This document shows positions 16,162-16,551 of a stretch of DNA of 60,014 bases, one piece after another. Position numbers and translations under genes: made by a program. Source of the stretch: Octopus sinensis (Eukaryota); NCBI RefSeq assembly GCF_006345805.1, contig NW_021834491.1:1-60014 (forward strand), read 5' to 3'. Every line of letters begins with the position of its first letter. The first letter of the stretch is position 1. The notes beneath the pieces are model-generated. The model searched no databases. It worked only from the letters and a program-made list of their open reading frames with translations, and was not told the origin of the DNA.

Positions 16162-16325
16162 CATTATTTACATTATTTACATTCTCGGATATTTGTCCTC
16201 ATCTTGTTTGTTGTTAACACAACGTTTCGGCTGATATACCCTCCAGCCTTCTTCAGGTTTCTTGGGGAAATTTCGAACCTGGGTTCTCATTCCTGAGGTA
16301 TTCTTCGATGTTGTTGTTGTTGTTG

Positions 16326-16378
<53 letters not shown>

Positions 16379-16551
16379 GTTCAGATCACTGCTTGGAATC
16401 GAACTCGGAATCTTGGGGTTAGTAGCCCGCGCTCTTAACCACTACGCCACATGCCCGTTAACAACAAACAAGATGAGGACAAATTTCCGTCGAATGTAAA
16501 TAATGTAAATAATGTACATAATTCCTCATCTCTTAAATATAGAACTGTATA
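16162..16551 (-). mobile_element. tRNA-headed SINE with a minimal hammerhead ribozyme motif (16216-16261) and an inverted 5' copy of its 3' end; 10-bp TSD
   Basis: Minus strand: A box TGGCGTAGTGG, B box GAGTTCGATTCC, (AAT)n/(AAC)n, then GAAAC-CTGAAGA-A-GGCTG(GAGGGTATAT)CAGCC-GAA-ACGT-T-GTGTT. Inverted repeat 16161-16218 versus 16457-16515; TCCCATCATA at 16152-16161 and 16552-16561. Confidence 0.85.

What the first reader, a model, noticed from the sequence alone, without database searches (positions are those of the whole stretch)
16162..16551. Candidate Penelope-mobilised, hammerhead-bearing tRNA SINE whose inverted end starts at the predicted cleavage site
Seen: on the minus strand, a Pol III head (A box TGGCGTAGTGG, B box GAGTTCGATTCC), an (AAT)n spacer, then CTGAAGA, a 5-bp stem II (GGCTG/CAGCC), GAA, ACGT, T, and a stem I with 4 of 5 pairs (GAAAC/GTGTT). 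Directly 5' of the head sits an inverted copy of the element's own 3' end (16457-16515, about 3 differences) that extends 36 nt beyond the sense copy. The unit sits in a 10-bp TSD inside the hAT remnant. The inverted segment begins GTTAAC, 2 nt downstream of the predicted GUU cleavage (product GUGUUAAC...). Known: Penelope-like elements carry minimal type I hammerheads with a palindromic stem III that cleave as dimers, and they typically insert with inverted partial terminal repeats bearing a short extra tail; classical SINEs borrow LINE tails. Inference: this is a SINE that borrowed a PLE ribozyme terminus and is copied by PLE machinery, with self-cleavage defining a template end. I am not aware of this combination being described in cephalopods, but cannot exclude it.
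Basis: partly seen in the sequence, partly recalled or inferred. Interest (0 to 1): 0.88.

Follow-up and report, generated by a model that had tools for sequence, protein, structure and literature searches.

The report
SINE-like element with Penelope hammerhead tail
A single ~390-bp insertion joins a tRNA-like (Pol III) head to a tail carrying the minimal hammerhead motif and the odd inverted-end-plus-"tail" scar typical of Penelope-like retrotransposons, so it looks like a SINE copied by Penelope machinery rather than by a LINE; only one copy could be examined.

Summary
On the minus strand, 16560-16152 is one insertion flanked by a 9-bp duplication (12/13 over 13). It holds a 31-35-nt extension, a 60-nt inverted copy of the element's own 3' end, a tRNA-like head with A and B boxes, (AAT)16(AAC)7, a minimal type I hammerhead motif and a 60-nt 3' module.

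The Penelope (PLE) link is supported by new evidence.
- The hammerhead strand CTGAAGA-A-GGCTGG...CAGCC-GAAA is identical to hammerheads ~170-180 nt downstream of GIY-YIG PLE ORFs from other animals (L009, L012).
- It has the unpaired base before stem II that is described for PLE hammerheads.
- The inverted arm, the one-sided tail and the distances from the cut site (60 and 91-95 nt) fit the published PLE insertion signature.

Several points are not supported or not testable.
- No second copy and no partner PLE could be found, because no DNA of this organism beyond the window could be retrieved.
- In five PLE insertions from other animals, the inverted arm starts 20-424 nt upstream of the cleavage site, not at it.
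- Published PLE in-vitro work shows cleavage is dispensable for insertion.
- The active dimer fold is energetically disfavoured in this copy.

Verdict: probably a PLE-mobilised, tRNA-headed non-autonomous element, a new variant of known kinds. The idea that cleavage defines the template end remains speculative.

The parts
16552..16560 (-). Upstream copy of the target-site duplication, ATGATGGGA (similarity continues to 16548, 12/13)
16517..16551 (-). PLE-type 'tail': a 31-35-nt extension present only on the inverted arm. In the element's sense orientation it reads CATAATTCCTCATCTCTTAAATATAGAACTG(TATA). Its TCCTCATCT pairs with AGATGAGGA of the 3' module.
   Evidence: tail concept
16457..16516 (-). 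Inverted partial copy of the element's own 3' module. Its inner end is GTTAAC, abutting the first base of the head.
16384..16456 (-). tRNA-like head starting GGGCATGTGGCG. A box 16449-16439, B box 16406-16395, anticodon-loop-like CTACTAA. It resembles tRNA-Arg(ACG).
16310..16378 (-). Internal microsatellite (AAT)16(AAC)7, possibly the seam between the head module and the PLE-derived module
16262..16309 (-). Short body with a second B-box-like AGGTTCGAAAT (16280-16270). No TTTT run occurs anywhere in the 296-nt sense element.
16216..16261 (-). Minimal type I hammerhead motif. Stem I 5' GAAAC 16261-16257; C3-A9 CUGAAGA 16256-16250; unpaired A 16249; stem II 16248-16229; GAA 16228-16226; palindromic helix III ACGU 16225-16222; U17 16221; predicted cut 16221|16220; stem I 3' GUGUU 16220-16216.
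16161..16218 (-). 3' module (sense arm): GTTAAC..AGATGAGGA..(TGTAAATAA)x2 TGT. It ends 60 nt after the predicted cut. It is the presumed RT-recognition and initiation region.
16152..16160 (-). Downstream copy of the target-site duplication, ATGATGGGA

Best explanation
Window 16560-16152 (minus strand) is one retrotransposition event of a ~296-nt non-autonomous element.

What the element contains:
- A tRNA-derived, tRNA-Arg-like head with Pol III A and B boxes.
- An (AAT)n(AAC)n spacer.
- A 3' part taken from the pseudo-LTR region of a Penelope-like element (PLE): a PLE-type minimal hammerhead followed by a ~60-95-nt module that a PLE reverse transcriptase recognises.

Inferred mechanism:
1. 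Pol III transcribes the element from the head. The sense strand has no TTTT terminator until 28 nt past the insertion.
2. A PLE RT/GIY-YIG protein supplied in trans binds the 3' module. This module folds as a stem-loop, AGAUGAGGA...UCCUCAUCU, that spans the two end points.
3. The protein cuts both DNA strands and starts reverse transcription internally at two alternative sites on the RNA.
4. The bottom-strand copy started at site 1 (no tail) and ran to the tRNA +1 end.
5. The top-strand copy started at site 2 (31-35-nt tail) and stopped after ~95 nt, giving the inverted arm.
6. Repair produced the 9-13-bp target-site duplication.

The hammerhead is inherited from the PLE. Whether it cleaves, and what that would do, is unknown. 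If active, it would act as a dimer through the ACGU palindrome and probably needs protein help.

Shown: the anatomy, the homology of the hammerhead strand to PLE hammerheads, and the PLE-type insertion scar.
Inferred: Pol III transcription, trans-mobilisation by a PLE, and that head and tail travel together as a family.
For: (1) Single TSD-flanked unit with a 60-nt inverted arm at 95% identity and a one-sided 31-35-nt extension. [quoted passage not shown] The tail is the sequence between two RT start sites, and both DNA strands are cleaved and extended.

(2) The hammerhead descriptor gives one hit in the window against 0.0033 expected. [quoted passage not shown]

(3) The pattern CTGAAGAAGGCTGG-N(3-15)-CAGCCGAAA, taken from a PLE in L009, hits the window once with 0 expected. 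It also hits 13 contigs labelled as bacterial MAGs or SAGs, 12 of which look like animal contamination. In L009 and L012 the motif lies ~170-180 nt downstream of GIY-YIG endonuclease ORFs.

(4) The alignment is collinear through the cut site: cand GAAACGT-TGTGTTAACAAC versus GAAATAT-TGTAACAAC. The helix III tetramer changes AUAU to ACGU and stays self-complementary. A third PLE family (L005) also has GAAACGU-H.

(5) Distances from cut to ends are 60 and 91-95 nt here. They are 66-78 nt in L005, ~69 and ~107 nt in L016, and 85-92 nt to the RT start in the Anolis PLE PAc.

(6) The 9-nt complement between tail and 3' module reaches this length in 1.5% of shuffles.

(7) Head: A and B boxes at tRNA spacing (0 expected in shuffles). 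The Rfam tRNA model is the best family and aligns from model position 1 at the element's first base.

(8) Context: the window carries tRNA-Deu SINEs and a PLE remnant. In Octopus vulgaris, PLEs are 6.8% of the genome and 'unclassified' SINEs are ~250 Mb in 1279 families.
Against: - Only one copy exists in the 60-kb window.
- No copy and no partner PLE could be retrieved from any collection. A multi-copy family and the co-mobility of head and tail are therefore unproven.
- The only PLE remnant in the window (about 25690-25160, minus strand) shares no nucleotide similarity with the tail.
- The 3' module after the first ~12 nt is not similar to the 3' modules of the foreign PLEs.
- tRNA homology of the head is below the thresholds of ARAGORN and Rfam.
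- Rfam hammerhead models do not match.
- Stem I has a mismatch. A competing hairpin GUUGU/ACAAC covers the cut site, and the active dimer fold is far above the MFE.
- None of the PLE hammerhead loci from other animals has a tRNA-like head nearby.
Confidence: 0.6

Rival explanations
1. One-off chimera or nested composite. A short, head-less non-autonomous PLE derivative (body, hammerhead and 3' module with its inverted arm) became joined to an unrelated tRNA-SINE RNA or copy (head plus (AAT)n). This could happen by RT template switching during the same insertion, or by a later insertion at the arm/body junction. In that case there is no SINE family with this architecture.
For: - No second copy in the window.
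- The (AAT)16(AAC)7 array sits exactly between the two modules.
- tRNA-derived SINE heads with the same A-to-B-box spacing are common in the window.
- Short non-autonomous Penelope elements without tRNA heads are known.
- Foreign PLE hammerhead loci have no tRNA head.
- PLE RTs are reported to retrotranspose host sequences in trans.
Against: - One TSD flanks the whole unit.
- There is no recognisable separate TSD around head plus microsatellite.
- The head starts at tRNA position +1 exactly at the junction with the inverted arm. This is what a full-length Pol III transcript copied to its 5' end would give.
- No TTTT interrupts the 296-nt unit.
Confidence: 0.22
2. An ordinary LINE-mobilised tRNA SINE. 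The hammerhead-like motif is chance, and the 5' inversion arose by twin priming or template switching during LINE TPRT. The (TGTAAATAA)2 end would be a LINE-type short-repeat tail.
For: - The sense copy ends in a 9-nt unit repeated twice.
- LINE RT remnants are present in the window.
- Rfam finds no hammerhead.
Against: - Twin priming inverts a more 5' part of the RNA. It does not duplicate the 3' end or add 31-35 extra nt beyond it.
- 23 specified bases of the hammerhead are identical to hammerheads of GIY-YIG PLEs. Chance expectation is 0 in shuffles.
- The tail shows no similarity to any LINE remnant in the window.
Confidence: 0.06
3. A MITE or foldback-type DNA transposon with ~60-bp terminal inverted repeats that happens to enclose tRNA-like and hammerhead-like sequence.
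For: A 60-nt inverted repeat at 95% identity lies at both ends of the head-to-tail segment.
Against: - The duplicated target ATGATGGGA does not abut the left repeat. It lies 31-35 nt outside it, so the ends are asymmetric.
- The interior is organised as head, then tail, on one strand.
- The right arm is continuous with a PLE-homologous hammerhead.
Confidence: 0.03

Closest known systems
[quoted passage not shown]
   Same: - Conserved core.
- Helix III replaced by a 4-nt palindrome, implying dimeric action.
- Short helix I.
- An unpaired base 5' of stem II.
- Enzyme strand identical to PLE copies in L009, L012 and eleven other contigs.
   Different: Here the motif is not next to a PLE ORF. It sits in a ~296-nt element that starts with a tRNA-like head. 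Activity is untested.
PLE insertion architecture (Evgen'ev & Arkhipova 2005; Craig et al. 2021; Frangieh et al. 2024)
   Same: - Inverted partial copy abutting the 5' end.
- A 30-40-bp tail on one end only.
- A TSD.
- Ends ~60-110 nt downstream of the hammerhead cut site.
   Different: - No ORF.
- No partial tandem or pLTR.
- The inverted arm is very short and stops 2 nt 3' of the cut site. Five foreign PLE insertions have arms reaching 20-424 nt upstream of it.
Sm-alpha / Sj-alpha SINE-like retroposons of Schistosoma (Ferbeyre et al. 1998; Laha et al. 2000)
   Same: A tRNA-related, Pol III-type head combined with a hammerhead ribozyme in a short non-autonomous retroelement.
   Different: Sm-alpha carries a canonical type I hammerhead that Rfam-type searches detect. 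It often occurs in tandem arrays, and multimer processing is proposed. Here the hammerhead is the minimal PLE type and is missed by Rfam. The copy is solitary and carries a PLE insertion scar.
Animal non-LTR retrozymes and short non-autonomous Penelope elements
   Same: Non-coding elements with type I hammerheads, thought to be mobilised by PLE machinery.
   Different: Retrozymes are defined as tandem repeats that give circRNAs, and they have no Pol III head. This element is a single unit with tRNA-type A and B boxes.
Classical tRNA-derived SINEs of octopus and other animals (OR1, OR2, OK; tRNA-Deu, tRNA-Core)
   Same: A tRNA-derived head with A and B boxes at the 5' end, a TSD, a length of about 300 nt, and the same kind of head as the tRNA-Deu copies in this window.
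   Different: - No Deu or Core domain.
- The 3' part is PLE-derived, not LINE-derived.
- The inverted arm and tail are not features of LINE-driven SINE insertions.

Membership tests
PLE-type minimal type I hammerhead | Conserved core C3-U4-G5-A6-N7-G8-A9, G12-A13-A14, A15.1-U16.1, H17 (not G) | tested here: met
   CUGAAGA ... GAA-A..U-U at 16256-16221
PLE-type minimal type I hammerhead | Helix II hairpin directly between A9 and G12, with an unpaired nucleotide at its 5' end | tested here: met
   6-bp stem GGCUGG/UCAGCC preceded by an unpaired A at 16249. The feature is described.
PLE-type minimal type I hammerhead | No helix III hairpin; a short palindrome allows an intermolecular helix III (dimer) | tested here: met
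   ACGU is self-complementary. Homologues have AUAU or ACGU.
PLE-type minimal type I hammerhead | Short helix I (4-5 bp) | tested here: inconclusive
   4 of 5 pairs with an internal A/G mismatch. A competing hairpin covers the site.
PLE-type minimal type I hammerhead | Homology to hammerheads located in the pLTR or 3' UTR of RT/GIY-YIG PLEs | tested here: met
   23 specified bases are identical to L009 and L012, where the motif lies 170-181 nt after GIY-YIG ORFs.
PLE-type minimal type I hammerhead | Self-cleavage (as a dimer, or protein-assisted) | not testable with these tools
   Energetics only: the double-hammerhead fold is -11.9 kcal/mol, against -25.8 for two monomer MFE folds and -31.4 for the cofold MFE.
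Rfam hammerhead families (Hammerhead_1, _3, _II, HH9, HH10) | Match to the covariance model | tested here: not met
   No hit at gathering score, nor at E<=10 on 901 nt or 68 nt.
PLE-mediated insertion | Inverted 5'-truncated copy immediately adjacent to the 5' end | tested here: met
   16516-16457 versus 16218-16161, 2 mismatches and 1 indel.
PLE-mediated insertion | 30-40-bp 'tail' extension at only one end | tested here: met
   31-35 nt on the inverted arm only; definition.
PLE-mediated insertion | 3' module shared with an autonomous PLE of the same genome | not testable with these tools
   No DNA of the source organism beyond the window could be retrieved. The one PLE remnant in the window shows no similarity.
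tRNA-derived SINE | Internal Pol III promoter: A and B boxes at tRNA spacing, at the 5' end | tested here: met
   TGGCGTAGTGG, 33 nt, AGTTCGATTCC; 0 expected in shuffles.
tRNA-derived SINE | Recognisable tRNA homology of the head | tested here: inconclusive
   Rfam tRNA is the top family but scores 12.7 bits against a gathering score of 29. ARAGORN finds none. Identity to tRNA-Arg-ACG recalled from memory is 71%.
tRNA-derived SINE | Dispersed multi-copy family with individual TSDs | tested here: inconclusive
tRNA-derived SINE | 3' tail shared with a partner LINE | not tested
   No LINE similarity in the window. The tail instead carries PLE features.
Animal non-LTR retrozyme | Head-to-tail tandem repeats of the hammerhead-bearing unit | tested here: not met
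   Single unit: no tandem copy appears in TRF or blastn.
Sm-alpha-type SINE-like element | Canonical type I hammerhead with helix III and loop-loop contacts | tested here: not met
   There is no helix III hairpin and no Rfam Hammerhead_1 hit.

The most novel reading that the evidence does not exclude
In this family the hammerhead has a job. Two element RNAs pair through the ACGU palindrome inside a dimeric PLE ribonucleoprotein. One RNA is cleaved. The released ~95-nt 3' fragment (cut site to tail end) is copied to its very 5' end onto the second DNA strand. Ribozyme cleavage would then set the inner end of the inverted arm, which here starts 2 nt from the predicted cut. That would give PLE hammerheads, whose role is still unknown, a defined function in shaping insertions.
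Probability: 0.08. Interest if true: 0.85.

Novelty: new variant of a known kind. Interest (0 to 1): 0.55.

Why it matters
SINEs are defined as passengers of LINEs. A Pol III tRNA-type head coupled to a Penelope 3' module would show that PLE machinery can also drive SINE-like amplification.

I found no such pairing in the searchable literature. From memory, no repeat class for it exists.

If the window is from an octopus, which is not verified, this bears on a real gap. In O. vulgaris about 250 Mb of SINEs in 1279 families are 'unclassified', and PLEs make up 6.8% of the genome.

It also offers a compact natural substrate of ~300 nt for studying how PLE reverse transcriptases recognise their template, and what the PLE hammerhead does. 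The weight of the finding is limited, because only one copy could be examined.

Tried and rejected
- Rfam at gathering score and at E<=10 on the whole window, on 901 nt, on the head and on the ribozyme: no hammerhead, only a weak tRNA hit.
- ARAGORN: no tRNA.
- Second copies in the window by blastn with word size 7: none, only (AAT)n arrays.
- Translating the SINE, and the window's PLE remnant, to reach spurious ORFs or relatives in the 5.8-billion-protein index: no hits.
- A full HMMER scan with the PLE remnant gave PLE fragments. The closest (P0001) is not on record as a gene. The others come from unrelated animals that share no repeats with the window.
- Exact look-ups of two window ORFs: not on record.
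- Exact or degenerate tail patterns in metagenome, viral and GTDB contigs: none, apart from two chance hits in a bacterial-type gene.
- Searching papers for the head and ribozyme strings: none. The O. vulgaris repeat paper's supplement holds no sequences.
- Empty-site paralogue in the window: none.
- A covariance model from foreign PLE hammerheads was abandoned, because MAFFT could not align stem II coherently. A fixed pattern was used instead.
- A deletion hypothesis (GAAA fused to the conserved downstream ACGTTGT box) was considered. It was dropped because the alignment is collinear without a gap.
- The hAT context could not be confirmed by Pfam.
- Ferbeyre 1998 and Lunse 2016 are not held in the library.
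Full report
**What is there**

Read on the minus strand, the region is a single insertion unit. In order it contains:
- ATGATGGGA (16560-16552).
- A 31-35-nt stretch (to 16517).
- A 60-nt segment (16516-16457) that is the reverse complement of the unit's own last 58-60 nt.
- GGGCATGTGGCGTAGTGG..., a tRNA-like head (16456 to about 16384).
- (AAT)16(AAC)7 (16378-16310).
- A 48-nt body.
- A hammerhead-like motif (16261-16216).
- A 3' module ending ...(TGTAAATAA)2TGT at 16161.
- ATGATGGGA again (16160-16152).

The two arms differ by 2 substitutions and 1 indel. blastn reports 95% identity over 60 nt. The duplicated target is exact over 9 nt and 12/13 over 13. Its coordinates (16162-16551) cover the unit without the duplications.

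**More than chance?**

An A box (TRGCNNAGTGG) followed 25-45 nt later by a B box (GGTTCGANNCC, at most 1 mismatch) is expected 0.0 times in shuffles of the window. It occurs five times. The other four occurrences lie in copies of a tRNA-Deu-type SINE.

A minimal-hammerhead descriptor asks for:
- the core CUGANGA,
- 0-1 unpaired nt,
- a stem II of at least 4 bp,
- GAAA,
- a self-complementary 2-6-mer,
- H17,
- at least 4 of 5 stem I pairs.

It hits only this site. Dinucleotide shuffles give 0.0033 hits per window. The descriptor was written after seeing the site, so the independent test described below matters more.

The 9-nt complement between the extra tail and the 3' module (AGAUGAGGA/UCCUCAUCU) is reached in 1.5% of tail shuffles.

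**Standard detectors**

- ARAGORN finds no tRNA.
- On the head alone, the Rfam tRNA model is the best of 4227 families and aligns from model position 1 at the element's first base. The score is only 12.7 bits, against a gathering score of 29.
That is a lead, not a database result.
- No Rfam hammerhead family matches, even at E<=10 on 68 nt.
This is expected for a motif that lacks a helix III hairpin.

**Link to Penelope-like elements: the ribozyme**

[quoted passage not shown] They state that such motifs lack helix III and should act as dimers.

I could not reach DNA of the source organism. However, the window contains a degraded Penelope/Poseidon-type RT remnant (about 25690-25160, minus strand). 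An exhaustive HMMER scan with it returned PLE proteins. Fetching genomic places for relatives gave loci from unrelated animals that share no repeats with the window.

In one locus (L009), a PLE with HTH_animal and GIY-YIG ORFs is followed ~170 nt after its stop codon by
TGTAC-CTGAAGA-A-GGCTGGT-TTG-GCCAGCC-GAAA-TAT-A|GTACA.
Its enzyme strand is identical to the candidate's.

The pattern taken from L009, CTGAAGAAGGCTGG-N(3-15)-CAGCCGAAA, was then searched:
- It hits the window once, with 0 of 100 shuffles giving any hit.
- It hits 13 contigs filed under bacterial MAGs or SAGs in GTDB. By content, 12 of them look like animal host contamination. L017 looks like a chance hit in GC-rich sequence.
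- In L012 the motif lies 181 nt after a GIY-YIG ORF (...VIYMIQCTKCNLQYIGETKRRFKDRSNEH...).

A multiple alignment is collinear through the cut site. The candidate reads AAAC-CTGAAGAAGGCTGG...CAGCCGAAA-CGT-TGTGTTAACAAC, and L012/L019 read AAAC-CTGAAGAAGGCTGG...CAGCCGAAA-TAT-TGTAACAAC. The helix III tetramer is AUAU in these families. It is ACGU in the candidate and in a third PLE family (L005: CTGACGA-A-GGGC..GCTC-GAAACGTC|AGCTT). Both tetramers are self-complementary, as a dimeric helix III requires.

The motif is therefore homologous to PLE hammerheads and is not a chance look-alike.

**Link to PLEs: the insertion scar**

- Craig et al. [quoted passage not shown]
- Frangieh et al. (2024) showed for the Anolis PLE PAc that both DNA strands are cleaved and extended.
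- They also showed that reverse transcription starts internally at two sites, and that the tail is the sequence between them.
- In PAc the hammerhead cut site is at +26, the shortest active template starts at +20, and the RT starts at +111-118. That places the RT start 85-92 nt 3' of the cut.

In the candidate, the sense copy ends 60 nt after the predicted cut, and the arm with the tail ends 91-95 nt after it. In the foreign PLE insertions the arms end 59-78 nt after the cut (L005, L016, L022). In L016 the copy with the tail ends about 107 nt after the cut.

The candidate thus reproduces the PLE architecture both qualitatively and quantitatively. LINE twin priming would invert a more 5' part of the RNA. 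It would not duplicate the 3' end and add extra bases. A MITE reading fails because the duplicated target does not abut the left repeat.

**The cleavage-defines-the-end idea**

The inverted arm begins at GTTAAC, 2 nt 3' of the predicted cut. I measured the same quantity for PLE insertions in the fetched loci that have an inverted copy upstream. The arms begin at these positions relative to the cut:

| Locus | Arm start relative to cut |
|---|---|
| L005 (L006 and L007 are orthologous) | -81 |
| L016 | -352 |
| L022 | -424 |
| L018 | -83 |
| L019 | -20 |
| Candidate | +2 |

All five foreign arms include at least part of the ribozyme. Cervera & de la Pena likewise reported dual hammerheads on opposite strands 100-700 bp apart.

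For PAc, catalytic hammerhead mutants did not change insertion. The ribozyme cleaved only with protein present. No RNA-seq reads began or ended at the cut site.

For this copy:
- The monomer MFE forms stem II plus a hairpin GUUGU/ACAAC that covers the cut site.
- The double-hammerhead fold is -11.9 kcal/mol, against -25.8 for two monomer MFE folds and -31.4 for the cofold MFE.

A breakpoint within 3 nt of one given position in a ~300-nt element has a chance of roughly 2%. That is suggestive, but it is a single case. Alternative causes exist: RT stalling before the small hairpin or stem II, or the boundary of the protein-bound module, given that +20 is the minimal template start in PAc. I rate this part as unsupported but not excluded.

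**What remains unproven**

No second copy exists in the window. The attempts to retrieve the source genome and their call numbers are listed under Tried and rejected.

Three things therefore could not be tested:
- whether head, spacer and PLE tail form a multi-copy family;
- whether copies generally carry inverted arms;
- whether a PLE of the same genome shares the 3' module.

The (AAT)n(AAC)n array lies at the seam of the two modules. A one-off chimera (template switch from a PLE-derived RNA to a tRNA-SINE RNA) or a nested insertion therefore cannot be excluded. Three points argue for a single full-length Pol III transcript:
- one TSD flanks the whole unit;
- the head starts at tRNA +1 exactly at the junction;
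- there is no TTTT within the 296 nt.

The organism was not identified. tRNA-Deu SINEs, dense microsatellites and PLE and LINE remnants are compatible with an octopus as described. The 'hAT remnant' context was not confirmed.

**Comparison with what is known**

- tRNA-related SINE-like elements with hammerheads have been known since 1998 (Sm-alpha/Sj-alpha). Those carry canonical hammerheads and are often tandem.
- Animal non-LTR retrozymes and short non-autonomous Penelope elements are regarded as PLE passengers. They lack a Pol III head, and retrozymes are tandem by definition.
- De la Pena et al. note that most of the thousands of minimal hammerheads in animal genomes are dispersed in non-coding DNA and only some map to PLE pLTRs. 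Elements like this one could be among their carriers.
- Four literature searches found no description of a tRNA-headed SINE with a PLE tail. Repbase Reports and much of the subscription literature were not searchable.

I therefore class it as a new variant of known kinds. It works like a SINE, but with a PLE in the role of the LINE.

**Verdict**

- Observation: confirmed.
- PLE origin of the tail and PLE-type insertion: well supported for this copy.
- SINE family status: plausible but untested.
- Cleavage-defined template end: speculative, and contradicted as a general rule by five foreign PLE insertions and by published biochemistry.
- Interest: moderate (0.55).

Noticed in passing
window 25160-25690 (minus strand): Degraded Penelope/Poseidon-type RT remnant (…YKLTDSHSYLNFSSSHPKHTKLSIPYSQ…) with frameshifts. 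It abuts a long (TATC/ATAT)n microsatellite at 25681-26238, in line with the reported microsatellite bias of PLE insertions. It has no nucleotide similarity to the SINE tail.
   Followed up: partly
window 12816-12958, 15635-15784, 30034-30185, 47463-47540, 48820-48943: At least five copies of a tRNA-derived SINE with a Deu-like domain (…GTTGTGTTCTTGAGCAAAACACTT…). The heads have the same A-to-B-box spacing as the candidate. One copy lies about 370 bp from the candidate, on the other strand.
   Followed up: partly
window 16830-17100, 20783-21050, 21342-21624, 34850-35108, 50681-50936, 56217-56482 and others: A very abundant ~270-bp SINE-like repeat (84-88% identity between copies). It fills much of the window, and one copy directly flanks the insertion site.
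   Followed up: no
window 52053-52588(-), 23630-24118(-), 31691-32005(+), 32746-33003(+): LINE reverse-transcriptase and C-terminal remnants (weak RVT_1 and zf-RVT Pfam hits). None resembles the candidate's tail.
   Followed up: partly
window 16280-16270 (minus strand): A second B-box-like AGGTTCGAAAT inside the body, identical over CCAGGTTCGA to the T-arm of tRNA-Arg(ACG) as I recall it. This may be a relic of a second tRNA-like unit.
   Followed up: no
window 43077 (minus strand): Another hammerhead-like string, CTGAAGA-GGGG..(18)..CCCC-GAAATT. It has no convincing stem I and failed the descriptor.
   Followed up: no
window 22456-22655 and 53498-53574: Perfect tandem duplications (100 bp x2 and 38 bp x2, both 100% identical), unlike the surrounding decayed repeats.
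   Followed up: no
L011-L016, L018-L023 (GTDB 'genome contigs'): Contigs filed under bacterial MAGs carry animal PLE 3' ends with hammerheads and, in L012, a GIY-YIG ORF. They include Endozoicomonas HY_Ok, Phycisphaerales MAG.67, Cytophagales IP31a_bin.1 and nine contigs of 'bacterium isolate 3a0c8501…'. This looks like host-DNA contamination of the bins. L017, the 13th contig hit by the same pattern (Thermodesulfobacteriota SAG), looks like a chance match in GC-rich sequence.
   Followed up: partly
L009, L011, L016, L018, L019, L020, L022 (3' of the hammerhead): In this foreign PLE lineage, a conserved ACGTTGT box lies 17-30 nt after the cut site. The optional ~40-nt tail ends in a small hairpin plus GATCCAACGT. 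L016 and L022 each show one arm with the tail and one without it.
   Followed up: partly
L019 6080-6160: An inverted partial hammerhead copy abuts a sense copy that is truncated only 9 nt upstream of C3. This gives a near-perfect palindrome centred just upstream of the ribozyme.
   Followed up: no
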